IMG/VR virus record: IMGVR_UViG_3300044974_001280
Coordinates: 124,001 to 188,000 of that record
DNA: 64,000 nucleotides
Reading direction: 5' to 3' (one strand)
The notes under the pieces are model-generated. The model was not told the DNA's origin. It saw nothing but the letters and a program-made list of their open reading frames with translations, and ran no database searches. Positions within the stretch are counted from its first letter, which is position 1, and every line of letters begins with the position of its first letter. A program made the translations under genes and the position numbers. Of this stretch, positions 7,834 to 45,846 are shown piece by piece.

Positions 7834-7842
7834 CAAACGACT

Positions 7843-8160
7843 ATGAAACACATCACTGTTTATGAATCTTGGTCCAGGGGGAGAACAGTAGAATTAGAAT
7901 CCACCCGGAATCGGGCAAAGATCACTCTGACTCTTCAAGGTTCAAGAATAGAAAGCATCGACAATCCTAGAGGCATGAGATTTCCCTGGTCAGTCGGACA
8001 AAACATCAATCGCAGTTTAGAAACCTGGGCTTGTAACAACGGCTTCACCATCAACGGAGAAGATCCTTGTCCAGAAGAAAAAATCTTCGGAGTCAAAACT
8101 TCCCAGGTGCCTAAAGGCCACGAGTGGAGGATGCTTTTTCCGAATAAATTTAGAAAATAA
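7843..8160 (+). CDS. Hypothetical protein
   Basis: MKHITVYESW targeting-like start. Confidence 0.6.
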   Translation: MKHITVYESWSRGRTVELESTRNRAKITLTLQGSRIESIDNPRGMRFPWSVGQNINRSLETWACNNGFTINGEDPCPEEKIFGVKTSQVPKGHEWRMLFPNKFRK

Positions 8161-8204
8161 GATCACCGCGGGACCTCCCGAATAACAAAAAAACAAAAAA
8201 ACAA

Positions 8205-8633
8205 ATGCCAGCAGTTTCAAGAGCACAGCAATCTTTCATGGGTCAGGCTTGGGCCTTAAGAACAGGACAACTGAAGTTGAAGGATATAGATCCTAGATAC
8301 AGAAAAGCCATTAAGGAAATAGCAGACGGAGAAATGACCAACAAGGAGTTGGAAAAATTTGCCTCCACTAAATCTAAAAAACTCCCTCATTATGTAAAAG
8401 AAGAAGAAGTAAACGAGGATGAAATCTCAGAAAAAGGAATTCCAGTGGCGGGTGCTACTTCTCCTTTGATTGGATCCAAGAAGGTTCCCAGCTTTTCTCC
8501 TGGTATCAGCCCCGGGGGAGGCATTAAACCTATCATTCCGCATCTGAACCCAGAAGCAACCAAAACTAAAAAAACAATGTCTAATTTGGTTGACTACAGA
8601 GATTACATCAAGAGCAAGAAGAAGAAAAAATAG
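8205..8633 (+). CDS. Hypothetical protein (DUF3008-like N-terminus)
   Basis: MPAVSRAQQ...ELEKFASTKSKKLP; C-terminal LVDYRDYIK. Confidence 0.55.
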   Translation: MPAVSRAQQSFMGQAWALRTGQLKLKDIDPRYRKAIKEIADGEMTNKELEKFASTKSKKLPHYVKEEEVNEDEISEKGIPVAGATSPLIGSKKVPSFSPGISPGGGIKPIIPHLNPEATKTKKTMSNLVDYRDYIKSKKKKK

Positions 8634-8634
8634 C

Positions 8635-9048
8635 ATGAGATTCCTGCTCGAATATGAAGACTACGATCCTCGGGAAGAATATCTAACCGATACCCGTAGG
8701 AGTCTTTCTCTTGGAGGCATCAGGAAATCTGACATTTATCAAAAAATTCTGGATCTGGGCTTTGTTGAGCAGCATTCTCTTCAACAGGGTCTCAACAACA
8801 CCCTTAAATTTTTTCGTCCTGATCAGGAATCTTTAGAGCCAGGTGAGGAGAAAATCTTCTATACAATCCATCCCACAGGCATTGTTAGAAGATACAATCC
8901 GAAAGTTGACGACACAATTCCCGAGGGATTTGGAAATGAAATCAAAAAATTTCCGGGGCCTTTTACTAAACCGGCCGACTATCTCAGAGCCCTTAATTAC
9001 CTGTATTATTATTTAAAAAGGAAAGAAATGAGAGGAAACTTTAGATAG
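8635..9048 (+). CDS. Hypothetical protein
   Basis: Starts MRFLLEYEDY directly after the previous stop. Confidence 0.6.
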   Translation: MRFLLEYEDYDPREEYLTDTRRSLSLGGIRKSDIYQKILDLGFVEQHSLQQGLNNTLKFFRPDQESLEPGEEKIFYTIHPTGIVRRYNPKVDDTIPEGFGNEIKKFPGPFTKPADYLRALNYLYYYLKRKEMRGNFR

Positions 9049-9085
9049 TTTTTGAGATATATACTAAAAATTTAAACTCTTTTTT

Positions 9086-23038: not shown

Positions 23039-24142
23039 CTAGACAATCCCGTCCTTCCAGGGATCGACGTAGCCCAATTTGGTCTTCAGGGCCTTAATGA
23101 CCCGAAGCTGCTCAGGACTGAGTCTCTGTTCGATCTCCTGTCTCTGCTCCTCCCAGCCTGACTTATCCCAGAGGTCTGCCAGCTGCAGGAGCACCTGGCC
23201 GTCTTTCTTCAGGTCTCCCTTCAGTTTCTGCAGCCAGAAGCCGGCATCGAACATGGGCAGGGTCACAATCAGGCTCCGGGCTTCGCTATCTCCAGTGGCC
23301 AGAATCTTGGTCCAGCCCAGGGGATTCCATGCCCCACTTTGGAGTGTGAAAGAGTCGCACCGGAGAATCCCACCCACCGTCTGTGGTGCCCCGACCAGGG
23401 AGGTCAGCCGGTTATTGTCGCAGTAGAAATTCCCACCCACCGTCTGAGGTGCCCCGGCCAGGGTCGTCAGCTGGTTGTAGGAACAGGAGAAATACCCATC
23501 CACCGTCTGGGGTGCCCCTGCCAGGGAGGTCAGCTGGTTGCCGGAACAGGAGAAATTCCCACCCACCTTCTGGGGTGCCCCTGACAGGGAGGTCAGCTGG
23601 TTTCTGGAACAGGAGAAATACCCACCCACCGTCTGAGGTGCCCCGACCAGGGTCGTCAGCTGGTTGTAGGAACAGAAGAAATGCCCATCCATCGTCTGAG
23701 GTGCCCCGGCCAGGGTCGTCAGCTGGTTGTAGGAACAGTCTAAATCCCCATCCACCGTCTGGGGTGCCCCGACCAGGGTCGTCAGCCGGTTGCCGCCACA
23801 GTAAAAATGCCCATCCACCGTCTGAGGTGCCCCGACCAGAGAGGTCAGCTGGTTTCTGAAACAGGAGAAATCCCCACTCACCTTCTGGGGTGCCCCTGCC
23901 AGGGAGGTCAGCTGGTTGACGGAACAGTAGAAATTCCCACTGACATGTCCGAACGAGATGCCCTGTAAGCTCTTTAATCTTTTACCCCCACAAGCAAAAC
24001 TTCCCTTTACATCCACTAGCCCTGTCTCTGGGTTGACCGACCAGGTCCCTTGCGTGTATTTGGTCAGGAAAGTCTTTTGCTTTTGGGTCAGATCTGAAGT
24101 CTTCCGGGCTTCGAACAGGGAAAAGGATTGGAGGTGTTTCAC
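23039..24142 (-). CDS. LRR-like repeat protein, paralog 1 (9 modules of 21 aa)
   Basis: Modules xFxCxxNxLT(S/T)LxGAPQ(T/K)VxG; GTG start 5 nt after GATATATA (24148-24155). Confidence 0.85.
   Translation of the reverse strand: MKHLQSFSLFEARKTSDLTQKQKTFLTKYTQGTWSVNPETGLVDVKGSFACGGKRLKSLQGISFGHVSGNFYCSVNQLTSLAGAPQKVSGDFSCFRNQLTSLVGAPQTVDGHFYCGGNRLTTLVGAPQTVDGDLDCSYNQLTTLAGAPQTMDGHFFCSYNQLTTLVGAPQTVGGYFSCSRNQLTSLSGAPQKVGGNFSCSGNQLTSLAGAPQTVDGYFSCSYNQLTTLAGAPQTVGGNFYCDNNRLTSLVGAPQTVGGILRCDSFTLQSGAWNPLGWTKILATGDSEARSLIVTLPMFDAGFWLQKLKGDLKKDGQVLLQLADLWDKSGWEEQRQEIEQRLSPEQLRVIKALKTKLGYVDPWKDGIV
23369..23935 (-). repeat. Nine tandem 63-bp coding repeats
   Basis: Recurrent ...caccgtctg(a/g)ggtgcccc...cagg...gtcagc unit. 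Confidence 0.9.
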
Positions 24143-24156
24143 GCCCTTATATATCT

Positions 24157-24939
24157 CTAGACAATCCCGTCCTTCCAGGGATCGACGTAGCCCAATTTGG
24201 TCTTTAGGGCCTTGATGACCCGAAGCTGCTCAGGACTGAGTCTCTGTTCGATCTTCTGTCTCTGCTCCTCCCAGCCTGGTTCATCCCAGAGGTCTGCCAG
24301 CTGCAGGAGCACCTGGCCGTCTTTCTTCAGATCTCCCTTCAGTTTCTGCAGCCAGAAGCCGGCATCGAACAGGATCACAATCAGGCTCCGGGCTTTGCTA
24401 TTTTTTTTGGCCAGAATCTCGGTCCAGCCCTGGGGATTCCATTTCCCACTTCGGACTTCGAAAGAGTCGCAGTAGAAACCCTCCCTCACCGTCTGGGGTG
24501 CCCCGGCCAGGGTCGTCAGCTGGTTTCTGAAACAGTAGAAATCCCCATTTACCGTCTGGGGTGCCCCGACCAGGGAAGTCAGCTGGTTGCCTTGACAGTA
24601 GAAATCCCCACCCACCGTCTGGGGTGCCCCGGCCAGGGTCTTCAGCTGGTTGCCGCCACAGAAGAAACTCCCACCCACCGTCTGGGGTGCCCCGGCCAGG
24701 GTCGTCAGCTGGTTTCTGAAACACCAGAAATCCCCACTGACATGTCCGAACGAGATTCCCCGCAGAGACTTCAGTCTTTTGTAACTACAGTCAAAATCTC
24801 CTTTCACATCGACCAGACCGGTCTGCTGGTTGACCGACCAGGTCCCTTGCGTGTATTTGGTCAGGAAAGTCTTTTGCTTTTGGGTCAGGCCTGAAGTCTT
24901 CCGGGCTTCGAACAGGGAAAAGGATTGGAGGTGTTTCAC
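24157..24939 (-). CDS. LRR-like repeat protein, paralog 2 (4 modules)
   Basis: Same N- and C-caps as paralog 1; GATATATA at 24944-24951. Confidence 0.85.
   Translation of the reverse strand: MKHLQSFSLFEARKTSGLTQKQKTFLTKYTQGTWSVNQQTGLVDVKGDFDCSYKRLKSLRGISFGHVSGDFWCFRNQLTTLAGAPQTVGGSFFCGGNQLKTLAGAPQTVGGDFYCQGNQLTSLVGAPQTVNGDFYCFRNQLTTLAGAPQTVREGFYCDSFEVRSGKWNPQGWTEILAKKNSKARSLIVILFDAGFWLQKLKGDLKKDGQVLLQLADLWDEPGWEEQRQKIEQRLSPEQLRVIKALKTKLGYVDPWKDGIV
24481..24732 (-). repeat. Four tandem 63-bp coding repeats
   Basis: Same unit as 23369-23935. Confidence 0.9.
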
Positions 24940-24952
24940 GCCTTATATATCT

Positions 24953-25936
24953 CTAGACAATCCCGTCAAAGTCTTTCCAGGGATTGACGTAGCCCAATTT
25001 GGTCTTTAGGGCCTTGATGACCCGAAGCTGCTCAGGACTGAGTCTCTGTTCGATCTCCTGTCTCTGCTCCTCCCAGCCTGACTTATCCCAGAGGTCTGCC
25101 AGCTGCAGAAGCACCTGACCGTCTTTCTTCAAGTCTCCCTTCAGTTTCTGCAGCCAGAAGCCGGCATCGAACATGGGCAGGGTCACAATCAGCCTCCGGG
25201 CTTTTCTATCTCCAGTGGCCAGAATGGCCAACCAGCCCTGGGGATTCCATTCCCCACTCCGGAGTTTGAAAGAGTCGCAGAAGAAATACCCACCCACCGT
25301 CTGAGGTGCCCCGACCAGGGTCGTCAGCCGGTTGTGGGAACACCAGAAATCCCGACCCACCGTCTGAGGTGCCCCGACCAGGGAGGTCAGCTGGTTGTTG
25401 TCGCAGTAGAAATTCCCACCCACCGTCTGAGGTGCCCCGGCCAGAGAGATCAGTCGATTGCCGGAACAGCCGAAACTCCTATTTACCTTCTGAGGTGCCC
25501 CGGCCAGGGTCGTCAGCTGGTTGCCGGAACAGTCGAAAACCCCACCCACCGTCTGAGGTGCCCCTGCCAGGGAGGTCAGATGGTTGCCTTGACAGAAGAA
25601 ACTCCCACACACCGTCTGGGGTGCCCCGACCAGGGAGGTCAGCTGGTTGTTGTCGCAGGAGAAATACCCACCCACCGTCTGGGGTGCCCCGGCCAGGGAG
25701 GTCAGATCGTTGCCGGCACAGGAGAAATTCCCACTGACATGTCCGAACGAGATGCCCGATAGAGACCTCAGTCCGCTGTAACTACAGTCAAAATCTCCTT
25801 CCACATCGACCAGACCGGTCTGTCGGTTGACCGACCAGGTCCCTTGCGTGTATTTGGTCAGGAAAGTCTTTTGCTTTTGGGTCAGATCTGAAGTCTTCCG
25901 AGCTTCGAACAGGGAAAAGGATTGGAGGTGTTTCAC
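24953..25936 (-). CDS. LRR-like repeat protein, paralog 3 (7 modules)
   Basis: Same caps; GATATATA at 25941-25948. Confidence 0.85.
   Translation of the reverse strand: MKHLQSFSLFEARKTSDLTQKQKTFLTKYTQGTWSVNRQTGLVDVEGDFDCSYSGLRSLSGISFGHVSGNFSCAGNDLTSLAGAPQTVGGYFSCDNNQLTSLVGAPQTVCGSFFCQGNHLTSLAGAPQTVGGVFDCSGNQLTTLAGAPQKVNRSFGCSGNRLISLAGAPQTVGGNFYCDNNQLTSLVGAPQTVGRDFWCSHNRLTTLVGAPQTVGGYFFCDSFKLRSGEWNPQGWLAILATGDRKARRLIVTLPMFDAGFWLQKLKGDLKKDGQVLLQLADLWDKSGWEEQRQEIEQRLSPEQLRVIKALKTKLGYVNPWKDFDGIV
25289..25729 (-). repeat. Seven tandem 63-bp coding repeats
   Basis: Same unit as 23369-23935. Confidence 0.9.
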
Positions 25937-34044: not shown

Positions 34045-34806
34045 ATGAAAATTAGAGTAACCAGCACGAGTAATTTCATCCTTTTTCTCAAGAAGCTAAA
34101 AGTCGTCGACCGAAGCGTCTTGCTAGAATTAACAGAAACGGATCTTTTTTGTAAAGTTCACACCCCCGATAAATCTGTCATGAAATTCTCCAGAATTCCC
34201 ACTAATCTTATTTTTGATTCCTTAACTGAATTTTCAGCCCTTAAGTGTGACAGAATTAAAATAGGTCTGCTGGATATTACCAGACTGATGGATAGCTTCC
34301 GCTATTTTAGGTCGGAGGAGGAAGTTTTTTTACACCTGGAAATTGCCACTATTGATGATGAGTGTGTCGCAACGGAATTAAAATTGATCTCCCCCTCTCT
34401 GAAAATAAGGATCAAATGTGCTGATCTATCTTTGCTTTCTTATGTGGAGGATTCCATTTCTGATCTGGTTCAAAGTCAAGAAGATGCCTTGGCCAGTTTC
34501 AAATTTTTTGTTTCTGATTTCTCTTCTGTTTCTTCCCTCTGTGGAATGGAGTCCAACTCCGAAGAGCTGCTAAACTTCTCACTTCACTCGGACTACGTCA
34601 GAGTTATCGGAGAATCTTTTGACTATAAATTGACTATTGGAAGCTCTGACATAGATTGTGCCAAGCCCTTAGATGCTTCGATTTACAAATCACATTTGAA
34701 CTATGTAGATCCTGAATCATGCATTTGCTTCTTCCATGAGAACAGAATAGTCTTTGCCTCTGATCAAACCCCTACTTCCACCGCTATCGGCATTATCGAA
34801 AAGTAG
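34045..34806 (+). CDS. Probable DNA polymerase sliding clamp (gp45/PCNA-like)
   Basis: About 250 aa acidic alpha/beta pattern, early-type promoter, near polymerase and topoisomerase genes; no diagnostic motif. Confidence 0.45.
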   Translation: MKIRVTSTSNFILFLKKLKVVDRSVLLELTETDLFCKVHTPDKSVMKFSRIPTNLIFDSLTEFSALKCDRIKIGLLDITRLMDSFRYFRSEEEVFLHLEIATIDDECVATELKLISPSLKIRIKCADLSLLSYVEDSISDLVQSQEDALASFKFFVSDFSSVSSLCGMESNSEELLNFSLHSDYVRVIGESFDYKLTIGSSDIDCAKPLDASIYKSHLNYVDPESCICFFHENRIVFASDQTPTSTAIGIIEK

Positions 34807-35608
34807 AGAAATATCCCCTCATATTGCTCAGAATTTTCACTTTTTTCTTCGTATTGAGATCTAGAACTTTTTCTAGCTCCCGTCTGAAATTGGCAACTTC
34901 TGGATATTCCCAAAACATAGCTAGATCCACCATGCGATCTGGATTATCGACAATATAATTCTTCAAGAAATTTACATCTAAAAAAGGAAGGGTTGAAATC
35001 AGAGCTTCAATACGGGTAAAATTTTTGGATTTAGCTTCTTCTAAGGCTTGTATCCAACCTAGATAATTCCATTTACCTTCATTAAAATCGACCAAATCGG
35101 AGTAAAAACCTTTCTTCAATTTAACTGGAGCTCCTACCAAACTGGTTAAGGGATTACCAAAGGCCAAGTACTGCCCACCAACTTCAACAGGACCCCCAAC
35201 TAGATCTTTAAGATTGTTGTTGTTGCAAGAGAAATTCTTCCCTATTTTAGTAGGTCCTCCCTGCAAGGAGGTCAAAGAGTTATCGCTACAGTTGAAACTT
35301 CCTTGAACTTCTTGTGGAAATCCCTCTAGATCTTGAAAAAAATTTCTAGTGCAATAAAAAACCCCGGTCACCTTGCCAAATCCGATCCCCTTGAAAATAT
35401 CAATTTCCCGGGTCTGATTAAAAGGTTCAGAAAGATAAAAATTGCCTGTGATGTCCACCCTGTCAGTTTTCCTGTTCATTTCCCAGGTGCCAACAACGTG
35501 TTTATTTAAGATTTCTGTTTGCTTTCTGGACAATCTTGTGCCAGCTGCCCGATCTCCTTTTTTTGCCTCGAAAATTTTAAAACTTTGAATGGGGTTCTCC
35601 TTTTGCAT
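34793..35608 (-). CDS. Divergent LRR-like repeat protein, paralog 4
   Basis: Four xFxCxxNxLxxLxGxP modules and similar caps; IQSFKIFEA N-terminus; GATATATA 35613-35620. Confidence 0.75.
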   Translation of the reverse strand: MQKENPIQSFKIFEAKKGDRAAGTRLSRKQTEILNKHVVGTWEMNRKTDRVDITGNFYLSEPFNQTREIDIFKGIGFGKVTGVFYCTRNFFQDLEGFPQEVQGSFNCSDNSLTSLQGGPTKIGKNFSCNNNNLKDLVGGPVEVGGQYLAFGNPLTSLVGAPVKLKKGFYSDLVDFNEGKWNYLGWIQALEEAKSKNFTRIEALISTLPFLDVNFLKNYIVDNPDRMVDLAMFWEYPEVANFRRELEKVLDLNTKKKVKILSNMRGYFSTFR

Positions 35609-35671
35609 CAATTATATATCTAGGAATGGAAACAAACCAGCCTTCTAGCATAAAATAAACACAATCAAAAA

Positions 35672-37301: not shown

Positions 37302-38768
37302 ATGAATTCACTACCCGCCGTGTTAAATTTTTGCAACTTCTTGAACGAATCTAAAGAAGAAAAAGGAGTTGAACTCCTGATCCTCTCAGGCACGGTAAAA
37401 CCCAGTCCGACGTCCAAATCCTTCCTGGAGGAATGCCAAAAAAGGGGTATCCCTTGTTACGTTGTCAACATCAACAATGTGCAGCTTGAAAAAATCTATA
37501 ATGGACATCTACTCCGGGAGACCTCAGGGGACAAAAGAGAAATTTTCATAAATCCTGATGTGACCGCTATTATTCCTAGACGAGGGGTTATTTCCAATTC
37601 TCTGACCAAACAGATCATGAGAGAATTAGAAGCATCCCGTTATTTCTGTGTCAATTCTCTGGAATCTATCGAGGTGTGTGAGAGTAAATTCTTAACCTCA
37701 AAGGTGTTGGAAGAGAATGAACTTCCAGTTCCCAGATATGCCCTGGTGAACGGGGAAGAAAATCTGGATACTGCCTTGGAACAAATAGGTGGTCAGTTTC
37801 CTGTAGTAATGAAGTTGCTCTCGGGCACTCAGGGCATTGGGGTTTCAATTGTTGATTCTTACGCCTCTCTGAAATCTGTGTATCAAACGATTGCCAAATT
37901 GGATCCCGAAAAGGAAATTCTTATTCAGGAAAAAATTGACTCGAACTTTGATTTGAGAATTCAGGTCATCCTCAAAAGATTTGACCCTTTAATCACCAAA
38001 CCAAGCAATTGCATTATTCTTGGATCCATGAAAAGAGAAGCAGTAAAAAAGGATTTCAGAACCAATTACTCTCTAGGAGGTAAAGTTTCTGCCTATAATA
38101 TAGATGATAAAATTGCCGATTTAGCCTGTCGGGCTGCTAATTCTGTCGGTAGCCATTGGTGCGGGGTAGACATCATGATCGATAAAAAAACGAAAGAGCC
38201 GTATATTCTGGAGGTTAATTCCTCGCCTGGAACAGAAGGCATCTCTCAGGCCATAGGAAGACCCATTGTGGGGGACGTCATCGATTATGTCATCAATAAA
38301 AAGAATTGGATCTACTCTAGGATGGAGGTTGGTTATTTAGAGACGATTGAGATCCCAGAGATAGGAAAGCTTGTTGCCAAATTCGACACTGGAAATGGCT
38401 CCAGTGCCTCATCGATTCAGGCAGATGAAACGAAAGAAGTAGGAAATCAGCTGAAGTGGAAAATCGGGGGCAAAGAATTTACCAGCGACATTGTTGGTTA
38501 CACCGATACGGAAGTGGGTAGAGATAAAAGCAAGAGACCTATTATTCTGCTAGACGTCATGCTCAACGGGGTAAAGATCTCGGATGTAAAAGTTGCTCCC
38601 ACGGATAGGGTCCAAAAAAGCACTCCATTCCTGGCCAGCAGAGGCCTGATGAAAAAAATGGGGGTAATGGTTAATCCACACAAAGCCTTTGTCGTCACCG
38701 AGGAGATTAAAGGTTATAGACCTTTGAAAGCCAAAGGCAAACCCCATCTTGGCATTGAATTTTCTTAA
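37302..38768 (+). CDS. RimK-family ATP-grasp ligase fused to a retropepsin-like (RimB-type) protease
   Basis: FPVVMKLLSGTQGIGV, IQE, DLR, FRTNYSLGG, GVD, LEVNSSPG; C-terminal AKFDTGN; N-terminus VLNFCNFLNE. Confidence 0.85.
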   Translation: MNSLPAVLNFCNFLNESKEEKGVELLILSGTVKPSPTSKSFLEECQKRGIPCYVVNINNVQLEKIYNGHLLRETSGDKREIFINPDVTAIIPRRGVISNSLTKQIMRELEASRYFCVNSLESIEVCESKFLTSKVLEENELPVPRYALVNGEENLDTALEQIGGQFPVVMKLLSGTQGIGVSIVDSYASLKSVYQTIAKLDPEKEILIQEKIDSNFDLRIQVILKRFDPLITKPSNCIILGSMKREAVKKDFRTNYSLGGKVSAYNIDDKIADLACRAANSVGSHWCGVDIMIDKKTKEPYILEVNSSPGTEGISQAIGRPIVGDVIDYVINKKNWIYSRMEVGYLETIEIPEIGKLVAKFDTGNGSSASSIQADETKEVGNQLKWKIGGKEFTSDIVGYTDTEVGRDKSKRPIILLDVMLNGVKISDVKVAPTDRVQKSTPFLASRGLMKKMGVMVNPHKAFVVTEEIKGYRPLKAKGKPHLGIEFS

Positions 38769-40701: not shown

Positions 40702-41028
40702 TTAAGAGTGAATAGGAGGTTCTTCGAAATCATCAGCGTTTCGAGAAACCTCCTTTTTTTCTTTCTGGATTTCGGTCATGATGTACCCGGCAATCGCAAA
40801 TTCGATCCCCGCCCAGATGGCAACATCAGAGGCAGACAATTCAGAGTGTTTTTCTAACATCCAGAAGATCATGCCCCATTGCCCAATAACAAAAGCCAAA
40901 CTAGATTCTATTCTTTTCTTTGAAAAAAAAGATTTCTTGGGACTGTACATGTAAACTAGCTCTCGGCAGAGCCAAAACATTTTGACCCTAATTGTGCCGA
41001 AAAATTTCTGTAGATCTTTCATTCCCAT
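40702..41028 (-). CDS. Small two-helix membrane protein
   Basis: Two hydrophobic segments and charged C-tail; holin-like topology possible. Confidence 0.5.
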   Translation of the reverse strand: MGMKDLQKFFGTIRVKMFWLCRELVYMYSPKKSFFSKKRIESSLAFVIGQWGMIFWMLEKHSELSASDVAIWAGIEFAIAGYIMTEIQKEKKEVSRNADDFEEPPIHS

Positions 41029-41297
41029 TCAACATAATAACCCCCGCCAAATGATGTTCCGTGTTCCATCTGTCTGCCTCTGTTTTCTGTCCAATCCAAC
41101 CAATCTAGTCTATCTGCTGAATTGGCAAGTTCCAATAGACAATTAGCTAATTCCTGACCTTTTTCATCCCCCATAATTTTTTTCAATTTGTTTTTTATCT
41201 CGGGTAACTGCAAGATTTTTTTGGTGTTCTTTGCTTCTCCCTGGCCAATCAAATTCAGCATCTTCCTTTTCTCTGTTTCTGACATGAATTTATCCAT
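41019..41297 (-). CDS. Hypothetical protein
   Basis: 92-aa ORF in the clp operon. Confidence 0.5.
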   Translation of the reverse strand: MDKFMSETEKRKMLNLIGQGEAKNTKKILQLPEIKNKLKKIMGDEKGQELANCLLELANSADRLDWLDWTENRGRQMEHGTSFGGGYYVEWE

Positions 41298-41305
41298 AGT
41301 AAAAT

Positions 41306-42322
41306 TTATTTTATGTAATCAGAGATTTCCATCATTTTATCAAAATCTCCCTCCTCGTCGGCCTTTCTGTATTCCCTTTTTAGTTCTTCTTGGGACATAC
41401 TAGCGTAATCTTTGGTGATCTGTGATTCTGAACCACTTGGGGATTTGGCAGCTTGTCTGGCTTTCCATGCTGCTAATTTCCTTTCATACTCAGCCTTATC
41501 GGCTCTATCCTGCTCCAGCCAGGCATCTCTGGCTTCCACCCTCTCAATGACTACATCAATCAATTCATCGATTTTTTTTCTGGCTTCTGGAGTTTTTCTA
41601 AAAATTCCTGTCATCAGAGGTAAAAATTCAGCCGTGGGTAAATTCTCTGGATCCACCATATATTTCCAAAGTTCCTCTCTCAAATTAGAATATTTGATGA
41701 CCTTGGGATTCTCAAAGATAAATTTTCTTAGATCTTCGGCCATTTGAGGACCATATCTCCATTCGTCCGGTTCGTCTATCAATCCGAATTGATCTTCAAT
41801 AGCCTTGGCTAGTTCAGGGTCATCTGGTACTGCAGACATTGACATAACCCTCCAAATTCCTTTGACTGCCTCATGAATCAGCATGCTGAAATCCGCTCCT
41901 AAAGCTTTAATTACTGGTTTAGAATCCGGTCGAGGTCTGTTTTTTTGTCTTGTTTTTCTAAAGCTGTCATCCAACATCCTCCTTATTTCTGGTCCCTGTA
42001 CTAGTTTAATTTCAAGCTTTATGTCGTAGTAATCAATGAGGGGCTTGTATAGATCTGTAATTATTTCTCTTGCTAGATCTTCTAGCTCCTTTTCATACCC
42101 TCTAGAAAGTTGCTGGGATCTCGAAAAATTTCCCATCAACTGGCTAACGGCTTGGCTGATTCCTTGCGGGGATCCCTCGGGAGTTTTCCCGATGCCGAGT
42201 TTTTCTTTAGCTCTTCTCGTGACATCCTCTAGGTAGTCGGGGGGAATACTCACCATGTCTTTAACCCTAATAGCCTCATTAAAGGATGCAAAATTCTTTG
42301 TGAAATTGGCTTTTAGTGACAT
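41306..42322 (-). CDS. Hypothetical protein with HExxK motif and C-terminal UVR-like helix pair
   Basis: LIHEAVKG; C-terminal LKREYRKADEEGDFDKMMEI; N-terminus NFASFNE. Confidence 0.6.
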   Translation of the reverse strand: MSLKANFTKNFASFNEAIRVKDMVSIPPDYLEDVTRRAKEKLGIGKTPEGSPQGISQAVSQLMGNFSRSQQLSRGYEKELEDLAREIITDLYKPLIDYYDIKLEIKLVQGPEIRRMLDDSFRKTRQKNRPRPDSKPVIKALGADFSMLIHEAVKGIWRVMSMSAVPDDPELAKAIEDQFGLIDEPDEWRYGPQMAEDLRKFIFENPKVIKYSNLREELWKYMVDPENLPTAEFLPLMTGIFRKTPEARKKIDELIDVVIERVEARDAWLEQDRADKAEYERKLAAWKARQAAKSPSGSESQITKDYASMSQEELKREYRKADEEGDFDKMMEISDYIK

Positions 42323-42326
42323 ATTC

Positions 42327-44792
42327 TTAGTAAAATGGTTTTCTTTTTTTGAGTTCTGATATGTACCTTTTGATCACATCCATCTCTGAAGCTTTTTTCT
42401 TTATTGCTTGGGGTCCAGGAGCATGAGAAGGAACTTTAATTCGTGGTGCAATTGACGGATGAGGAGTTATTCTTCGGACCGGTTCTGCATCTGGATCAAA
42501 ATCCTCATCCTCATCTTCATCCTCACTGGGTGTAGGTTTAGGAGTAGGCTTAGGCTGTGGTTTAGGCGTAGGTTTAGGCAGTGGTTTAGGCAGTGGTTTA
42601 GGCAAAGGAGCTGGTTTTCCCTTTTCCTCTTCTTTCTCCCTTTCTGTTTCCGCCTCGTCTAATCTATCGCTAAATTCTGAAAAACTATTGATTCTTCTAG
42701 GACTTGTAGATTCGAACAAAGAAAAACTTTTGTGGATTTTTCTGAGTCTAGATTCAGATAACTCTGAAATTTTCTTTCCGTTAATGACTAACTCATCTGC
42801 CAAGGAATCGTAATCAATTTTGAGGTTGGATCCTTCCTCAATCTCTTCCTCGATTATAAAATTGGCTAGAGGGTCCTTGATATATTTCTCCACTGCTCTT
42901 CTAAGGGGTCTAGCCCCATATTCAGGGTCAAATCCGTGTTTAAGTAACAACTTGTAAACCGAAGTTCCCCAAGTCAGATTAATGTCTTGGGTATTTTTAA
43001 TCCTATCTGCCACCTTCTCGAGCTCTTTTTCTGCAATCTTTTTTATTGATTCTTGGTCTATTGACTGAAAAATAACAATATCATCTATTCTATTAATAAA
43101 TTCGGGCGAAAACTCTTTTTTGATCGCTGCATCGACTCTTGCTTTGATTTCCTCAGGTGATTCTGCTCCAGTCTGTTTTGTTTCATCTTCTGGTTCATCT
43201 TTAACCAAAAAACCAATCGCTTTTCTGGGTTCCTTTGATTTAACCTTTTTAGATCCTGTTTTTGATCCCACATTAGAAGTCATGATAATAACACAGTTTG
43301 TAAAGTCAACCGTTCTCCCTTGCCCGTCCGTCATCCTTCCATCTTCTAGCACCCCTAGCAGGGATTGTATAACTTGAGGGTTTGCTTTTTCGATCTCATC
43401 TAGCAAAATTACCGAATAAGGGTTTCTTCTGACTTGCTCTGTTAGTTTGCCTCCTTCCGAATAACCTACATAACCGGGAGGTGATCCAAACAATTTAGAT
43501 CCTGTATGAGCCTCCGAATATTCATTCATATCAATCCTAATCAATTTAGATTCCCTAGATCCAAAAAGCTCCTCAGCCAATTTTTTCACCAAATAGGTTT
43601 TACCTGTCCCAGTAGGGCCCACGAATAAAAATACCCCTTCAGGTCTATTAGGGTCTTTAAGACCCGACCTGTTTCTTTTAATTGTTCTAACAACGGTCTC
43701 TACCGCCTCGTCTTGACCGATAACTTTTGATTTCAGTCTGCTTGACATTCCTTTTAGGATTGCCTTACTGCCCTTTTTCATCGTTTCAACAGGAATCCCT
43801 GTTTTATCTGCCACTAGTTTTTCCACCATTTCTTTAGTGACGGTAATTTTAGGTCCCATTTGACCTTTCGCAGCCATTTTTTCAAGCCGACTCTCTATCT
43901 TTTCTTTTTCATCTGATAGATCTGCAGCAGCATCATAGTCACCTTCTGCCGTCTTTTGCCTGATCCGGTCTAGGAGTTCTAAATTTTTCTTTTCTAGATT
44001 CGCAACCTCCGCATCCGGGGCATTTTTAATGCGAATTCGTGCACCGGATTCGTCCATCAAGTCGATAGCTTTATCTGGCAAAAATCGGTCTTTAATATAC
44101 TGCTTAGATAGTTTATAAAAGGATTCTAAGGCTTCTGGTGAATAATTAACATGATGCCAATCCCCATATTTTTCTTGGATTTCTCTAAGTATTTCCATGC
44201 ATTCCTCGTAGGTAGGCTCTTCAACTTTGATCGGTTGAAATCTTCTTTCCATGGCTCCGTCTTTCTCAATAGTTTGACCATATTCACTATAAGTGGAACC
44301 ACCGATCATATGAAGTTTGGCTTTAGCCAAAAAGGGTTTGAGTTCATCGTAACTTGCTTTAGGTAGAGAATGGAGTTCGTCCACAAAAATAATCAAGTTA
44401 TCTTCCTCAATTTCACGGGCCAAAAGGGGTAAATAACCTCCATTAACTATTTTTTTAAATGCCCAGGTCAAATCTATTAACTTTTTCCCCTTTAAAAAAC
44501 CGGGACATTTATCGCTTGCCATTAAAAGAGCAAGCTTATCCACAATAGCGGTTTTTCCAACGCCCGGCTCTCCAACCAAAACTGGATTATCCTTGGTTTT
44601 CCTGGCCAGAATGCGAAGCAACTGTTCCAATTCCTTATCCCTTCCAATTACTTCATTTATCTCTCCCTCCTTCGCTGCTTTGGTCATATCCTCACCGTAT
44701 GCTTGCCAAAGCTTTTCATCATCTGGGACTTTTAGTTCTTCCTCAGATTCGAATAATCTTAATTTTTTGTAATTCTTGGATATTCTTTTCAT
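42327..44792 (-). CDS. ClpC/ClpA-like Hsp100 AAA+ ATPase lacking the Clp N-domain
   Basis: GEPGVGKT/FVDE, RFLPDKAID, UVR-like M domain, GPTGTGKT, PPGYVGY, LLDEIEKA, IGF loop, GARPLRR. Confidence 0.9.
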   Translation of the reverse strand: MKRISKNYKKLRLFESEEELKVPDDEKLWQAYGEDMTKAAKEGEINEVIGRDKELEQLLRILARKTKDNPVLVGEPGVGKTAIVDKLALLMASDKCPGFLKGKKLIDLTWAFKKIVNGGYLPLLAREIEEDNLIIFVDELHSLPKASYDELKPFLAKAKLHMIGGSTYSEYGQTIEKDGAMERRFQPIKVEEPTYEECMEILREIQEKYGDWHHVNYSPEALESFYKLSKQYIKDRFLPDKAIDLMDESGARIRIKNAPDAEVANLEKKNLELLDRIRQKTAEGDYDAAADLSDEKEKIESRLEKMAAKGQMGPKITVTKEMVEKLVADKTGIPVETMKKGSKAILKGMSSRLKSKVIGQDEAVETVVRTIKRNRSGLKDPNRPEGVFLFVGPTGTGKTYLVKKLAEELFGSRESKLIRIDMNEYSEAHTGSKLFGSPPGYVGYSEGGKLTEQVRRNPYSVILLDEIEKANPQVIQSLLGVLEDGRMTDGQGRTVDFTNCVIIMTSNVGSKTGSKKVKSKEPRKAIGFLVKDEPEDETKQTGAESPEEIKARVDAAIKKEFSPEFINRIDDIVIFQSIDQESIKKIAEKELEKVADRIKNTQDINLTWGTSVYKLLLKHGFDPEYGARPLRRAVEKYIKDPLANFIIEEEIEEGSNLKIDYDSLADELVINGKKISELSESRLRKIHKSFSLFESTSPRRINSFSEFSDRLDEAETEREKEEEKGKPAPLPKPLPKPLPKPTPKPQPKPTPKPTPSEDEDEDEDFDPDAEPVRRITPHPSIAPRIKVPSHAPGPQAIKKKASEMDVIKRYISELKKRKPFY
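42529..42610 (-). repeat. 12-bp tandem repeats encoding a PKP(L/T/Q) linker
   Basis: ggtttaggcagt-type units. Confidence 0.8.
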
Positions 44793-44896
44793 AAATTTTT
44801 TTTACATTTGCACTATATATTCATTCTCGTAAACGGTTCCGTTCCATCTCAGAGAAAAATTCGGGGTTTTTTAGAATGATGAAATATATAAAAAAT

Positions 44897-45336
44897 GGGG
44901 CTGAAAGGAATCGACTGGAGGCATAAGTTCTTTGACATGATGCAGGCGGTGCTAGCTTTGGAAGCACCTAAATATCCTAAGTACTTCTTAAATGGCGAAA
45001 ATCCATTTTTTGCTTTGGCTGGACTAGGTTCAGCGGAGCCGGTTGAAGTTGCCTTGGCAGCCTAAACCTCGGGGGGTGACACCCAGGAACAGAAAGTCAC
45101 GAGGGTGGGAAAAAGGGTTAACAGTACCACACAATCCGTCGATCCTCAGTAACCCTGCGGGCTCCGGTCCAATACCCTTCAGATCGCTGTAGGGATCGAT
45201 GATGTGGATTATCTCCTATCACAGTCAAAAACTAGGAGGTAAAGATTTGTCTGTTTAGAAAAATGGACTAAGCCTGTGAACGAGTTTCATGGAATTACCT
45301 AGCAGGACGGCGGTTCGAATCCGCCCAGCTCCACCA
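44897..45336 (+). ncRNA. ssrA: tmRNA
   Basis: 5' GGGGCTGA...TCGAC pairs with 3' CAGCTCC-ACCA (G3:U alanine determinant), T-arm GGCGG-TTCGAAT-CCGCC, internal tag frame 44994-45065 GENPFFALAGLGSAEPVEVALAA*. Confidence 0.95.
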
Positions 45337-45366
45337 AAAGTTTGTCGTAAGACAAACTTTTTTTTT
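45337..45366 (+). terminator. Rho-independent terminator of tmRNA
   Basis: AAAGTTTGTC-GTAA-GACAAACTTT followed by T run. Confidence 0.85.
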
Positions 45367-45399
45367 GAAACTTTTGTGTAATTTCTTATAGAAATTCGA

Positions 45400-45846
45400 A
45401 AGGCGTAGTTCTGCTTCAAAAAAAATTAAAAATTATGGCAATACTTTATTTTCTTTTAGGTGCGCTTACCGTGGTGGTCTTGGTCACCGTGGCGGGTGTG
45501 TTTAAGATGAATTCGGATTTAGACCGAAAAATCAGAACCAAAATCTCCGACCACATCGAATCGGTCATGAAAGAGATTGAAATTACAAGGAACAATTTAC
45601 ACTCCGATGATTCTTACATCCACAATCGGATCGATGAAGTTCTCGACGAAATCAATAAACGAGAAGAAGTCGGAATCAGATCGGGAAGAGAACAATTTGA
45701 ATCTCTACAAAAGCAGTTGGATTCCAGATGCGATAAGCTCTGGGCTCAGGTGAATGCAAATTACGAGTTGAGCCAAATGAGGTTCAACGATATTTCAAAC
45801 AAAAAAAATTCCCAGACAGAGGGATAAAATCGCAGAACTACGCCTT
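45400..45846. repeat. Perfect 15-bp inverted repeat bracketing one gene
   Basis: AAGGCGTAGTTCTGC (45400-45414) and GCAGAACTACGCCTT (45832-45846). Confidence 0.85.
45435..45827 (+). CDS. Membrane-anchored coiled-coil protein
   Basis: N-terminal TM MAILYFLLGALTVVVLVTVAGVF then heptad-rich region. Confidence 0.7.
   Translation: MAILYFLLGALTVVVLVTVAGVFKMNSDLDRKIRTKISDHIESVMKEIEITRNNLHSDDSYIHNRIDEVLDEINKREEVGIRSGREQFESLQKQLDSRCDKLWAQVNANYELSQMRFNDISNKKNSQTEG

What the first reader, a model, noticed from the sequence alone, without database searches (positions are those of the whole stretch)
41019..45336. Divergent tmRNA / remodelled ClpC locus: a phage-encoded tag-and-degrade module
Seen: tmRNA and a ClpC-like gene are transcribed back to back from about 100 bp containing two AATATATA boxes. 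The ATPase has no Clp N-domain (about 30 aa with a targeting-like peptide precede NBD1). NBD1 pore loops are degenerate (no GAKYRG; second loop deleted), while NBD2 GYVG and a ClpP-docking IGF loop are intact. A roughly 150-aa tail contains two more targeting-like motifs and a PKP linker. Established: IGF/L loops mark ClpP partners, and tmRNA tags route stalled products to Clp proteases. Inference: the phage supplies its own ribosome rescue plus an adaptor-independent or UVR-adaptor-controlled unfoldase, possibly packaged, that redirects host ClpP. No clpP or smpB is in this window.
Basis: partly seen in the sequence, partly recalled or inferred. Interest (0 to 1): 0.75.

Follow-up and report, generated by a model that had tools for sequence, protein, structure and literature searches.

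The report
Phage tmRNA beside remodelled ClpC unfoldase
A large lake-water phage carries its own ribosome-rescue RNA (tmRNA) right next to a stripped-down, phage-specific version of the ClpC protein-unfolding motor; both genes are real, but they are neighbours only in this phage's closest relatives, so a coupled "tag-and-degrade" unit is plausible and unproven.

Summary
A full-length tmRNA lies at 44897-45336 (Rfam 72 bits). Its tag has 23 residues and ends in ALAA. It lies 104 bp from a divergently transcribed 821-aa ClpC-like gene (42327-44792, minus strand). That protein has no Clp N-domain, and both pore loops of the first ATPase ring (D1) are deleted. All ATPase motifs, the GYVG loop of the second ring (D2) and the ClpP-docking IGF loop are intact. 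It also has a 160-aa tail.

The record is a T4-type jumbo phage from lakes. A composite of about 266 kb holds no clpP, smpB or tRNA.

New findings:
- The ATPase defines a conserved phage clade, always followed by two genes that are a split form of a widespread ~500-aa phage protein of unknown fold.
- The two AATATATA boxes belong to a genome-wide promoter-like motif.
- The "targeting-like" peptide recurs at the N-termini of other phage proteins and resembles T4 capsid-targeting propeptides.

The tmRNA-ATPase adjacency holds only in relatives at least 92% identical. A 56% relative with the same flanking genes lacks the tmRNA. Related large phages do carry ClpP-SmpB and ClpP-SmpB-tmRNA clusters.

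Verdict: observation confirmed, interpretation partly supported, a new variant of known kinds.

The parts
44897..45336 (+). One-piece tmRNA gene (ssrA), full length, with encoded CCA
   Evidence: Rfam RF00023 at 72.1 bits over model positions 1-374. The G3:U acceptor pair and T-arm are read from the sequence. The gene is identical in two sibling viral records.
44994..45065 (+). Tag reading frame of the tmRNA: 23 codons plus UAA, ending ALAA
   Evidence: Translation. The resume codon is placed by the Rfam alignment. A 93%-identical variant in a metatranscriptome run keeps Leu8 through a double change (UUG to CUU) and shows A14V and P16S.
44883..44890 (+). Promoter-like box AATATATA; its TATATA ends 6 nt before the first base of the tmRNA
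   Evidence: Sequence. It is one of 46 intergenic TATATA boxes, most lying 4-30 nt upstream of gene starts. It is conserved in the 92% variant L037 although the flanks have diverged.
45336..45369 (+). Intrinsic-terminator-like hairpin plus T-run directly after the CCA
   Evidence: Terminator scan: 11-bp stem, 4-nt loop, T-run. Sequence.
44814..44821 (-). Promoter-like box AATATATA, 21 nt upstream of the ATPase start codon
   Evidence: A GATATATA-type box sits at a similar distance upstream of the ATPase gene in L037, L007 and L017.
42327..44792 (-). ClpC-derived double-ring AAA+ ATPase, 821 aa, with no N-domain
   Evidence: phmmer against PDB ClpC, E 1e-150. Pfam AAA_2, AAA_lid_9 and ClpB_D2-small. 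PHROG 4871. It belongs to a distinct clade, P0001-P0016.
44700..44792 (-). N-terminal 31 residues that replace the Clp N-domain; contains LFES at residues 13-16
   Evidence: Alignment A1; coordinates.
44334..44456 (-). Central-channel region of the first ATPase ring (D1), with pore loop 1 (KYRG) and pore loop 2 both deleted
   Evidence: Gaps of 8 and 7-8 residues relative to ClpC, shared by all aligned clade members. Both loops are still present in the N-domain-less ClpC-like protein of the related phage G013.
43464..43475 (-). GYVG pore loop of the second ATPase ring (D2)
   Evidence: Invariant in alignment A1; coordinates.
43209..43220 (-). AIGF, the ClpP-docking loop; aligns to the VGF loop of B. 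subtilis ClpC
   Evidence: alignment. G527 and F528 are invariant across the clade.
42330..42806 (-). Clade-specific C-terminal tail (residues 663-821): LFES and SFSEF motifs, proline-rich PKP repeat, acidic run, conserved basic terminal helix
   Evidence: Alignment A1 shows that the tail motifs are conserved in the aligned clade members and absent from cellular ClpC; coordinates.
41306..42322 (-). Partner gene 1 (338 aa), 4 nt downstream of the ATPase; corresponds to the N- and C-terminal parts of a widespread ~500-aa phage protein
   Evidence: Conserved directly downstream of the ATPase in every clade locus examined. The profile search gives 508 hits. BLASTP against P0127. AF2 model pLDDT 89.9 with no named fold match.
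41019..41297 (-). Partner gene 2 (92 aa); corresponds to the internal domain of the same ~500-aa family, now a separate gene
   Evidence: Conserved in the clade. Aligns to residues 146-234 of P0127. The A8 consensus contains the QGEAKNTK segment.

Best explanation
The window lies in a jumbo phage from freshwater lakes, with a composite length of about 266 kb and a T4-type head protease and terminase. The locus holds two separate functional units that share a 104-bp divergent control region. Each unit is driven by the phage's own TATATA-type promoter box. The same box precedes virion genes, so expression is probably late (inference).

Unit 1 is a complete one-piece tmRNA. Transcription probably starts at or very near its mature 5' end and stops at a hairpin right after the CCA. 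It would be charged by the host alanyl-tRNA synthetase and would need host SmpB and EF-Tu, because the phage has no smpB. It would release stalled ribosomes and add a 23-residue tag ending in ALAA. That is the canonical C-terminal signal for host ClpXP-type degradation.

Unit 2 is an operon of three genes. The first is a phage-specific ClpC derivative. The other two together make up a split copy of a common ~500-aa phage protein. The ATPase keeps every ATP-binding and hydrolysis motif in both rings, the ClpC-like middle region, the D2 GYVG pore loop and the ClpP-docking IGF loop. It most likely forms hexamers that dock on the host's ClpP and thread substrates with the D2 ring alone. Some relatives bring their own ClpP. 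Substrate choice has moved from the lost N-domain and D1 pore loops to the new C-terminal tail, and perhaps to the two partner proteins.

The two units are neighbours because the tmRNA was inserted into this intergenic region in one recent lineage. Any functional link runs through ClpP and proteostasis in general, not through a dedicated coupled machine.

Shown here: gene identities, motifs, clade conservation, the synteny pattern, and the absence of clpP and smpB. Inferred: ClpP docking, D2-only threading, late timing and dependence on host SmpB.
For: tmRNA identity and anatomy. It is identical in sibling records from other lake samples. A variant tag in a metatranscriptome keeps Leu8 through a two-base synonymous change.

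Phage nature and size. No clpP, smpB, tRNA, clpS or second Clp ATPase in G000 plus G001.

ATPase: homology and motifs. Sixteen homologues form a separate score group (687-1606 bits against 564 or less for cellular ClpC). All aligned members share the N-domain loss, both D1 deletions, an invariant GF in the docking loop and the tail.

A genuine ClpP plus SmpB pair lies 2 kb upstream of the ATPase in L011, and a ClpP-like gene lies 7 kb upstream in L009.

The gene trio is conserved in all clade loci, while the surrounding genes are not.

Promoter motif: 46 intergenic TATATA boxes in the 6% of the genome that is non-coding, and boxes upstream of the ATPase in relatives.

Insertion scenario: L017 has the same neighbours without a tmRNA.
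Against: - No biochemical evidence exists for ClpP binding or for unfolding activity.
- With both D1 pore loops gone, the protein may not thread substrates the way ClpC or ClpA does.
- The host is unknown, so the host ClpP and SmpB are assumed, not shown.
- Landing next to the only Clp ATPase among about 255 genes has roughly a 1% chance under random placement. A selected functional link therefore cannot be dismissed.
- The record is not closed, so a small missing part could still hold clpP or smpB.
- Reads from the RNA library do not prove transcription.
Confidence: 0.55

Rival explanations
1. The tmRNA and the ATPase form a dedicated tag-and-degrade module. The phage tmRNA marks nascent chains with a phage-specific long tag, and the remodelled ClpC reads that tag directly and feeds the chains to the host's ClpP.
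For: - The two are immediate divergent neighbours sharing one control region with the same promoter box type.
- The chance of such adjacency is about 1%.
- Long tags of 20-25 residues recur in related phage tmRNAs, which hints at a phage-specific degron.
- The ATPase cassette lies near ClpP-SmpB in L011.
- ClpP-SmpB-tmRNA are contiguous in G016/G017.
- Complete large phages that carry SmpB usually also carry ClpP, a Clp ATPase and a tmRNA.
Against: - The adjacency is absent in the 56% relative with otherwise identical neighbours, and near the ATPase gene in the 66% relative, whose contig ends 0.8 kb upstream.
- In G008 the tmRNA lies 78 kb from ClpP-SmpB, and no ClpC-like gene is found there.
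- The tag ends in ALAA, which host ClpXP would already recognise (established knowledge).
- In ClpA, tag recognition involves D1 channel loops (from memory). Those loops are deleted here.
- Records with the ClpP-SmpB pair mostly lack this ATPase clade.
Confidence: 0.15
2. The ATPase is a virion (head-internal or ejected) protein or a head-assembly factor. The LFE-S type motifs at its N-terminus and in its tail would be capsid-targeting or prohead-protease cleavage sites. It would be loaded into proheads and trimmed at both ends, like T4 Alt, and would act either in head maturation or immediately after injection.
For: - The phage head protease belongs to the T4 gp21 family (Peptidase_S77, 33.5 bits). 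That family cleaves after Glu in motifs such as ITE or LTE, and T4 Alt is processed at both its N- and C-terminus (PMC5694885).
- Three tandem leucine-rich-repeat paralogues (23039-25936) and a 272-aa protein (34793-35611) start with the same kind of peptide, SFSLFEA or SFKIFEA.
- Related phages have several ORFs that start MKH-x-KLFE-x-F.
- LFES occurs 8 times against 1.8 expected. The sites include the head protease/scaffold protein, the 833-aa protein next to it and the N-terminus of a 300-aa protein.
- The operon uses the promoter box shared with virion genes.
- The tail motifs are conserved across the clade.
Against: - LFES also occurs in the terminase and twice in an asparagine synthase, which are not expected in heads.
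- No virion proteomics exists.
- The invariant ClpP-docking loop argues for a cytoplasmic protease partner.
- The N-terminal motif of the ATPase is weakly conserved (L-x-E-S only) in more distant clade members.
Confidence: 0.15
3. The ATPase works without ClpP, together with the split ~500-aa partner. The partner may be a zincin-like (pseudo)peptidase or an adaptor. The set would then be a self-contained unfoldase-plus-partner machine, or a disaggregase for phage assembly.
For: - The operon is tight (4-nt spacing) and the trio is conserved across ATPase identities of 45-92%.
- H150, E151, K154 and E184 are invariant in 102 homologues. This is a gluzincin-like spacing with Lys in place of the second His.
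- Weak structural similarity to M32 metallocarboxypeptidases and DUF885 over about 170 residues (Z 4.2-4.8).
- An ESM Atlas lead to a 'putative metalloprotease' cluster (score 0.87).
Against: - All the structural and Atlas signals are below the tools' own reliability limits.
- The ~500-aa family is widespread in phage records that show no ClpC-like gene.
- HExxK is not a known zinc site.
- Conservation of the IGF loop is hard to explain without ClpP.
Confidence: 0.1
4. The tmRNA is a passenger or a decoy. It would be either a recently captured gene with no role, or an RNA that titrates host SmpB and blocks host trans-translation instead of performing it.
For: - The phage has no smpB.
- The tmRNA is a recent insertion.
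- ARAGORN does not recognise it.
- A tRNA-like-domain-only tmRNA fragment in mycobacteriophage DS6A has been discussed as an SmpB titrator (PMC4131195).
Against: - It matches the full model, with an intact tag frame ending ALAA, its own promoter box and its own terminator.
- A distantly related phage (G008) carries a homologous tmRNA with a similarly long tag ending AYAA. That indicates a maintained phage lineage, not a fresh capture.
- No cellular genome among 185,579 species matched a 21-base signature of it, apart from one chance hit.
- The variant tag shows a synonymous double change.
Confidence: 0.05

Closest known systems
ClpC / MecB of Bacillus subtilis and ClpC1 of mycobacteria (class I Clp/Hsp100 unfoldases that partner with ClpP)
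   Same: Two AAA+ rings with intact Walker A and B motifs, arginine fingers and sensor motifs. A short middle region of ClpC length. The D2 GYVG pore loop. The (V/I/L)GF ClpP-docking loop at the homologous position. About 42-46% identity over residues 32-662.
   Different: No Clp_N domain, which is where MecA, McsB and phospho-arginine substrates dock. Both D1 pore loops are deleted. There is a 160-aa C-terminal extension with conserved motifs. It scores far below the NCBIfam equivalog cut-offs for ClpB, ClpA and the others. It is encoded by a phage and followed by two phage-specific genes.
Clp-family genes already noted in jumbo and huge phages (ClpP, ClpS, ClpA, ClpX; Iyer et al. 2021, PMC7824862)
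   Same: A phage-borne Clp-type ATPase of sporadic distribution, proposed to act as an unfoldase or translocase or to redirect host proteolysis.
   Different: That survey does not describe this clade's combination of N-domain loss, D1 pore-loop deletions, conserved tail and split partner genes. GenBank phage records hold only hits of about 42% identity that lack the tail.
Phage-encoded tmRNAs (mycobacteriophage Bxz1 group, Bacillus phage G, huge phages, marine phage Melnitz)
   Same: A complete ssrA in a lytic-type large phage. The ideas of ribosome rescue and of tagging proteins for recycling have been proposed before (PMC4131195, PMC7162821, PMC9004378).
   Different: It is a one-piece tmRNA with a 23-residue tag, in a genome with no tRNA and no SmpB. 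ARAGORN, the tool used in the published surveys, misses it, along with 8 of 12 related phage tmRNAs tested here.
T4 internal proteins and Alt: capsid-targeting N-terminal propeptides cleaved by the gp21 prohead protease
   Same: Short shared N-terminal peptides on otherwise unrelated or paralogous proteins, ending in hydrophobic-x-Glu. A gp21-family protease is present in the same genome. Alt is trimmed at both ends (PMC3012670, PMC5694885).
   Different: Here the motif also sits inside the tail of an AAA+ ATPase. No proteomic evidence exists. The resemblance of the peptide to the T4 targeting sequence itself rests on my memory of that sequence.

Membership tests
ClpC-type Clp/Hsp100 ATPase (ClpP partner) | Two AAA+ modules with intact Walker A and Walker B motifs | tested here: met
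   GEPGVGKT and FVDELH in D1; GPTGTGKT and LLDEIE in D2. All are invariant in the clade.
ClpC-type Clp/Hsp100 ATPase (ClpP partner) | N-terminal Clp_N (Clp repeat) domain | tested here: not met
   No PF02861 hit. Only 31 residues precede D1. The domain is absent in all 16 clade members, while the cellular hits carry it.
ClpC-type Clp/Hsp100 ATPase (ClpP partner) | D1 pore loop 1 with the aromatic KYR(G) motif, and D1 pore loop 2 | tested here: not met
   8-residue and 7-8-residue deletions at both sites in every aligned clade member. Both loops are retained in the G013 phage homologue.
ClpC-type Clp/Hsp100 ATPase (ClpP partner) | D2 pore loop GYVG | tested here: met
   Residues 440-443, invariant.
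ClpC-type Clp/Hsp100 ATPase (ClpP partner) | ClpP-docking (I/V/L)G(F/L) loop in D2 | tested here: met
   AIGF at 525-528 aligns to the ClpC KYVGF segment. G and F are invariant in the clade. Actual binding is not testable here.
ClpC-type Clp/Hsp100 ATPase (ClpP partner) | Short coiled-coil middle domain with a UVR-like motif | tested here: inconclusive
   The region (residues 258-309) aligns to ClpC without large gaps. PF02151 is neither scored for the query nor precomputed for clade members.
ClpC-type Clp/Hsp100 ATPase (ClpP partner) | Score above a curated equivalog cut-off (NCBIfam ClpB, ClpA, ClpV, ClpK, ClpG) | tested here: not met
   Best scores are 620 bits against a cut-off of 1232 (ClpB) and 559 against 993 (ClpA).
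tmRNA (RF00023, one-piece) | Covariance-model score above the gathering threshold over the whole model | tested here: met
   72.1 bits against 47, model positions 1-374.
tmRNA (RF00023, one-piece) | tRNA-Ala-like acceptor with a G3:U pair, a T-arm and a 3' CCA | tested here: met
   Read from the sequence: 5' GGGGCUG pairs with CAGCUCC, followed by ACCA; the T-arm is GGCGG/CCGCC.
tmRNA (RF00023, one-piece) | Internal open frame from a resume codon to a stop, ending in a hydrophobic degradation signal | tested here: met
   23 codons ending ALAA plus UAA. The resume codon follows the Rfam alignment.
tmRNA (RF00023, one-piece) | Cognate SmpB available | tested here: not met
   No PF01668 match in G000, G001 or G002. 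Host SmpB would be needed. The host is unknown.
Conserved phage 'tag-and-degrade' gene module (tmRNA linked to a Clp ATPase) | The linkage of the two genes is conserved across related phages | tested here: not met
   Present only in identical siblings and the 92% variant. Not seen in any other clade locus examined: L007/L008, L009, L011/L012 and L017 and G004/G005; L007 and L008 hold only about 0.8 and 0.1 kb upstream of the ATPase. L013-L016 were not scanned for tmRNA. L017 keeps both flanking genes.

The most novel reading that the evidence does not exclude
The remodelled ClpC is a packaged, injected unfoldase. The shared FxLFE-type peptides would target it to the prohead, together with the leucine-rich-repeat paralogues, where the gp21-type protease trims it at both ends. 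On infection it would enter with the DNA and immediately capture host ClpP. The phage tmRNA would meanwhile tag host nascent chains with a phage-specific long degron that this ATPase, or its split partner, reads. This would be a virion-delivered takeover of host proteolysis and ribosome rescue.
Probability: 0.06. Interest if true: 0.85.

Novelty: new variant of a known kind. Interest (0 to 1): 0.5.

Why it matters
Phage tmRNAs and phage Clp components are each known, but their roles in infection have never been tested. This locus offers four things.

1. It defines a well-delimited, conserved phage family of ClpC-derived motors that have lost both the adaptor-binding N-domain and the D1 pore loops while keeping the ClpP-docking loop. 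That is a natural experiment on which parts of a double-ring unfoldase are dispensable.
2. The conserved tail motifs recur at the N-termini of other phage proteins. This points to a short targeting or recognition peptide system that can be tested directly.
3. Related large phages carry ClpP-SmpB and ClpP-SmpB-tmRNA clusters. This strengthens the idea that big phages rebuild the link between ribosome rescue and proteolysis.
4. Most of these phage tmRNAs are invisible to ARAGORN, so published counts of phage tmRNAs are probably too low.

If ClpP docking is confirmed, the protein would also be a compact, adaptor-independent ClpP activator of practical interest.

Tried and rejected
- ARAGORN on the window and on the rest of the genome found no tmRNA or tRNA. 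In relaxed mode it mis-places the 5' domain and the tag. The Rfam result was used instead.
- A single-protein scan of viral contigs with the ATPase found no close relatives because the chosen patterns were too specific. The 338-aa partner was a better probe.
- BLASTN of the tmRNA against GenBank phages gave no match.
- Host identification failed. A 21-base tmRNA signature scanned across 185,579 species genomes hit only one stretch, inside an ORF and not a tmRNA. The Bacteroidota-like 'GEN' start of the tag and a SusC-like gene on a relative's contig are hints only.
tmRNA absence in those relatives is therefore known only within the sequence held, up to 10 kb each side.
- AlphaFold on the partner with 8 sequences was unusable (pLDDT 59). 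With 102 sequences it was good (89.9). Foldseek against PDB, BFVD and AFDB clusters, and VIA-align wide, gave no reliable named fold. Pfam, PHROGs and NCBIfam gave nothing for either partner gene or for nine long homologues.
- I considered that the tmRNA might be an attachment-site remnant or host DNA at a prophage border. This was rejected: the gene is full length, lies 62 kb from the nearest end of the record, sits between phage genes that are syntenic in relatives, and is identical in three independent lake assemblies.
- I considered that the record might be bacterial. This was rejected on the virion, protease, terminase and polymerase hits and on the near-uniform gene orientation.
- The RNA-library contigs cannot prove transcription and are used only for the variant tag.

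Full report
WHAT THE RECORD IS

The window is bases 124001-188000 of a 230,445-bp IMG/VR virus record, linear, with a CheckV completeness estimate of 85%. Nearly all of its roughly 255 ORFs point the same way. It encodes:
- virion structural proteins;
- a head-maturation protease of the T4 gp21 family (Peptidase_S77, 33.5 bits) and a T4-type large terminase;
- a DNA polymerase.

A sibling record, G001, is 100% identical over the last 1.5 kb of this record and runs 35.7 kb further. The composite is therefore about 266 kb. Near-identical DNA is present in at least 19 lake-water or freshwater sequencing runs. This is a freshwater jumbo phage. It is not a bacterial fragment or a prophage border.

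CHECK OF THE OBSERVATION

The tmRNA. Rfam places a full-length tmRNA at 44897-45336 (+) with 72.1 bits against a gathering score of 47. The sequence shows a tRNA-Ala-type acceptor stem with a G3:U pair, a T-arm and an encoded CCA. The frame at 44994-45065 gives a 23-residue tag, GENPFFALAGLGSAEPVEVALAA. ARAGORN misses the gene at default settings.

The ATPase. The 821-aa ORF at 42327-44792 (-) aligns over residues 32-662 with B. subtilis ClpC residues 166-797 (E about 1e-150).
- It has no Clp_N domain.
- The D1 segment that holds the KYRG pore loop is replaced, leaving an 8-residue gap.
- A further 7-8 residues are missing after Walker B, which removes the second D1 loop.
- Walker A and B of both rings, GYVG and an AIGF loop at the position of the ClpC VGF ClpP-docking loop are intact.
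- The tail (residues 663-821) carries LFES, SFSEF, a proline-rich PKP repeat, an acidic run and a basic terminal helix.

The control region. The two genes diverge from 104 bp that hold one AATATATA on each strand.

THE BOXES ARE PART OF A GENOME-WIDE MOTIF

TATATA occurs 46 times in the 6% of the genome that is intergenic. It is usually preceded by (A/G)GA and usually lies 4-30 nt upstream of a start codon. The genes that follow include the head protease and other genes of the structural region.
- The box on the ATPase side lies 21 nt before the ATG. A GATATATA-type box sits at a similar distance in relatives with 92%, 66% and 56% identical ATPases.
- The box on the tmRNA side ends 6 nt before the first G of the tmRNA. 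Transcription would therefore start at or next to the mature 5' end.
- A hairpin with a T-run follows the CCA directly.

By analogy with the T4 late promoter TATAAATA (my own knowledge), and because virion genes share the box, I infer late expression. This has not been shown.

THE ATPase DEFINES A PHAGE CLADE

A search of 5.8 billion proteins returns 16 proteins of 755-826 aa. They cover the query end to end at 45-92% identity and score 687-1606 bits. After them the scores drop to 564 or less for cellular ClpC, which carries Clp_N and UVR domains.

In the alignment, all clade members share these features:
- a short MKR-type N-terminus;
- both D1 deletions;
- the invariant G-F of the docking loop;
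- the tail motifs: F-x-LFES, then a basic-I-x-T-F-E-x-F motif, a proline-rich linker and a conserved basic C-terminal helix.

A more distant phage, G013, has a 658-aa ClpC-like protein that also lacks the N-domain. It still has both D1 pore loops and has no tail. The pore-loop loss and the tail gain are therefore specific to the clade, and the word 'remodelled' is apt. GenBank phages hold only hits of about 42% identity without the tail.

THE TWO DOWNSTREAM GENES

In every clade locus examined, the ATPase gene is followed within a few bases by a gene of about 340 aa and then one of about 91 aa. A profile search with the 340-aa family finds 508 proteins, most of them 450-550 aa long.

Pairwise comparison with one of these, P0127, shows how the pieces fit:
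- the 338-aa protein matches its residues 2-130 and 272-512;
- the 92-aa protein matches its residues 146-234.

The two genes are thus a split form of one common phage protein.

With 102 homologues AlphaFold gives a confident, mostly helical model (pLDDT 89.9). Foldseek finds no named relative in PDB, BFVD or AFDB clusters. VIA-align finds only weak matches (Z 5.2 or less). Among them are M32 metallocarboxypeptidases and DUF885 over about 170 residues.

H150, E151, K154 and E184 are invariant. This looks like a gluzincin HExxH...E site with Lys in place of the second His. I treat that as a lead only. More distant homologues of this family occur in phage records without any ClpC-like gene.

IS THE tmRNA-ATPase LINKAGE CONSERVED?

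No.
- The adjacency is seen in two essentially identical sibling records and in a 3-kb contig whose ATPase is 92% identical.
- In L017 the ATPase is 56% identical. The divergent neighbours are the same as in the window (130-aa membrane-type protein 85% identical, 310-aa protein 48% identical). The intergenic region is only about 120 bp and holds no tmRNA.
- L007/L008, L009, L011/L012 and L002 have no tmRNA within the sequence held. L002 is a viral contig whose ClpC-like gene is only 39% identical.
- Between this phage and L009 or L011, only the three-gene cassette is syntenic.

The simplest history is a recent insertion of the tmRNA, with its promoter and terminator, into the divergent control region.

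WIDER PATTERN

The broader idea nevertheless finds support.
- In L011 a genuine ClpP (231 bits against an NCBIfam ClpP model, below that model's curated cut-off of 361; the Pfam CLP_protease family is on record for the gene) and a genuine SmpB (157 bits, above its cut-off) are adjacent genes 2 kb upstream of the ATPase cassette. L009 has a divergent ClpP-like gene 7 kb upstream.
- ClpP-SmpB pairs recur in G006 and G008 and in 5 of 42 viral loci found with SmpB.
- In G016/G017, ClpP, SmpB and a tmRNA are contiguous.
- Among SmpB-bearing records that are at least 90% complete, 4 of 4 have ClpP, 3 of 4 have a Clp-type ATPase and 4 of 4 have a tmRNA-type hit.
- G008 carries a tmRNA homologous to the window's, with a tag of similar length ending AYAA. 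Other phage tmRNAs in this set also encode 20-residue tags.

The tmRNA therefore belongs to a phage lineage of long-tag tmRNAs and is not a fresh host capture. ARAGORN detects only 4 of the 13 tested.

This phage has a reduced set. It has a tmRNA and one Clp ATPase. The roughly 266 kb held contains no SmpB, ClpP, ClpS or tRNA.

THE 'TARGETING-LIKE' PEPTIDE

- Three tandem leucine-rich-repeat paralogues (23039-25936, minus strand) start with an identical peptide containing SFSLFEA.
- A 272-aa protein (34793-35611, minus strand) has SFKIFEA near its start.
- The ATPase has LFES at residues 13-16 and SFSLFES in its tail.
- Related phages have ORFs that start MKH-x-KLFE-x-F.
- LFES occurs 8 times against 1.8 expected. 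The sites include the protease/scaffold protein and its neighbours, but also the terminase and an asparagine synthase.

gp21-family proteases cut after Glu in hydrophobic-x-Glu motifs. T4 internal proteins share a capsid-targeting propeptide. T4 Alt is trimmed at both ends (PMC3012670 and PMC5694885). Packaging of the ATPase is therefore a legitimate hypothesis, but it is untested.

EXPRESSION

One metatranscriptomic run holds near-identical contigs over parts of the ATPase gene and a 93%-identical tmRNA fragment. In that fragment the Leu8 codon has changed at two positions and still encodes Leu, and two other tag residues are conservatively replaced. This is weak support for selection on the tag peptide. 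It does not prove transcription.

MECHANISM AND VERDICT

Most likely (0.55) the locus holds two independent units that share a promoter region.
- One is a tmRNA that depends on host SmpB. It frees ribosomes and adds an ALAA-ended tag.
- The other is a ClpP-docking ClpC derivative that threads substrates with its D2 ring only. Its substrate selection has moved to the tail and perhaps to the split partner.

The rival readings are:
- a dedicated coupled module (0.15);
- a packaged or assembly-related ATPase (0.15);
- a ClpP-independent machine with the partner (0.1);
- a decoy or passenger tmRNA (0.05).

Phage tmRNAs (PMC4131195, PMC7162821, PMC9004378) and phage Clp genes (PMC7824862) are already known. 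The specific remodelled ClpC clade, its split partner and the shared peptide motif appear not to have been described. I rate the finding a new variant of a known kind, with interest 0.5.

Noticed in passing
window 23039-25936 (minus strand): Three tandem paralogues (367, 260 and 327 aa) with weak leucine-rich-repeat hits sit in a locally GC-rich stretch (0.55 against about 0.40). They share an identical N-terminal peptide of about 30 residues (MKHLQSFSLFEARK...). Each has a TATATA box only 4-5 nt upstream of its start, which would make their mRNAs nearly leaderless.
   Followed up: partly
whole genome; e.g. window 4777, 9058, 14241, 37272, 48614: A genome-wide promoter-like motif, (A/G)GA-TATATA. 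There are 46 intergenic copies, mostly 4-30 nt upstream of starts, with no obvious -35 element. It is reminiscent of the T4 late promoter.
   Followed up: partly
window 37302-38768 (+): A RimK-like ATP-grasp protein (Pfam RimK 114 bits; the PHROG is annotated as a ribosomal protein S6 modification enzyme) lies 6 kb from the tmRNA. It may be a second translation-directed gene in a phage that has no tRNAs.
   Followed up: no
window 41019-42322 (minus strand): The 338-aa and 92-aa genes are a fission of one ~500-aa phage protein family. The excised internal domain has moved downstream as its own gene. The family has 508 detectable members, no annotation and no solved fold.
   Followed up: yes
window 45435-45827 (+) compared with L017:8710-9102: The 130-aa predicted membrane protein next to the tmRNA is 85% identical to its counterpart in a phage whose ATPase is only 56% identical and whose next gene is 48% identical. 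That is unusually strong conservation for a small protein of unknown function.
   Followed up: no
G016:C1:59623-61242 (locus L058 about 7319-9073); also G017: A contiguous ClpP-SmpB-tmRNA cluster in another large phage. tmRNA lies within 40-700 nt of SmpB in several further records (G033, G035, G041, G042).
   Followed up: partly
loci L097-L107, L050 and the window: ARAGORN at default settings detects only 4 of 13 phage tmRNAs that Rfam scores at 51-86 bits. ARAGORN-based surveys of phage tmRNAs are likely to undercount them. The tags that were detected are long (20-21 residues).
   Followed up: partly
L029-L031, L033-L035 (viral contigs): Six other viral contigs share the identical 32-nt 3' tRNA-like end of this tmRNA, but they carry permuted (two-piece) tmRNAs set in tRNA arrays.
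   Followed up: no
G000 plus G001 extension (L019-L028, L108, L109): No tRNA gene is found anywhere in the roughly 266 kb, although a tmRNA is present. Relatives such as L011 carry arrays of about 20 tRNAs.
   Followed up: partly
G000:C1:99591-110927 (outside the window): A single ORF of 3,778 aa lies in the structural region, flanked by several ORFs of 1,200-1,400 aa.
   Followed up: no
L015:16123-17004: A SusC/TonB-dependent-receptor-type gene (CarboxypepD_reg plus outer-membrane beta-barrel) lies on the same 50-kb contig as a clade member. It could be a Bacteroidota host hint, an auxiliary gene or a chimeric assembly.
   Followed up: no
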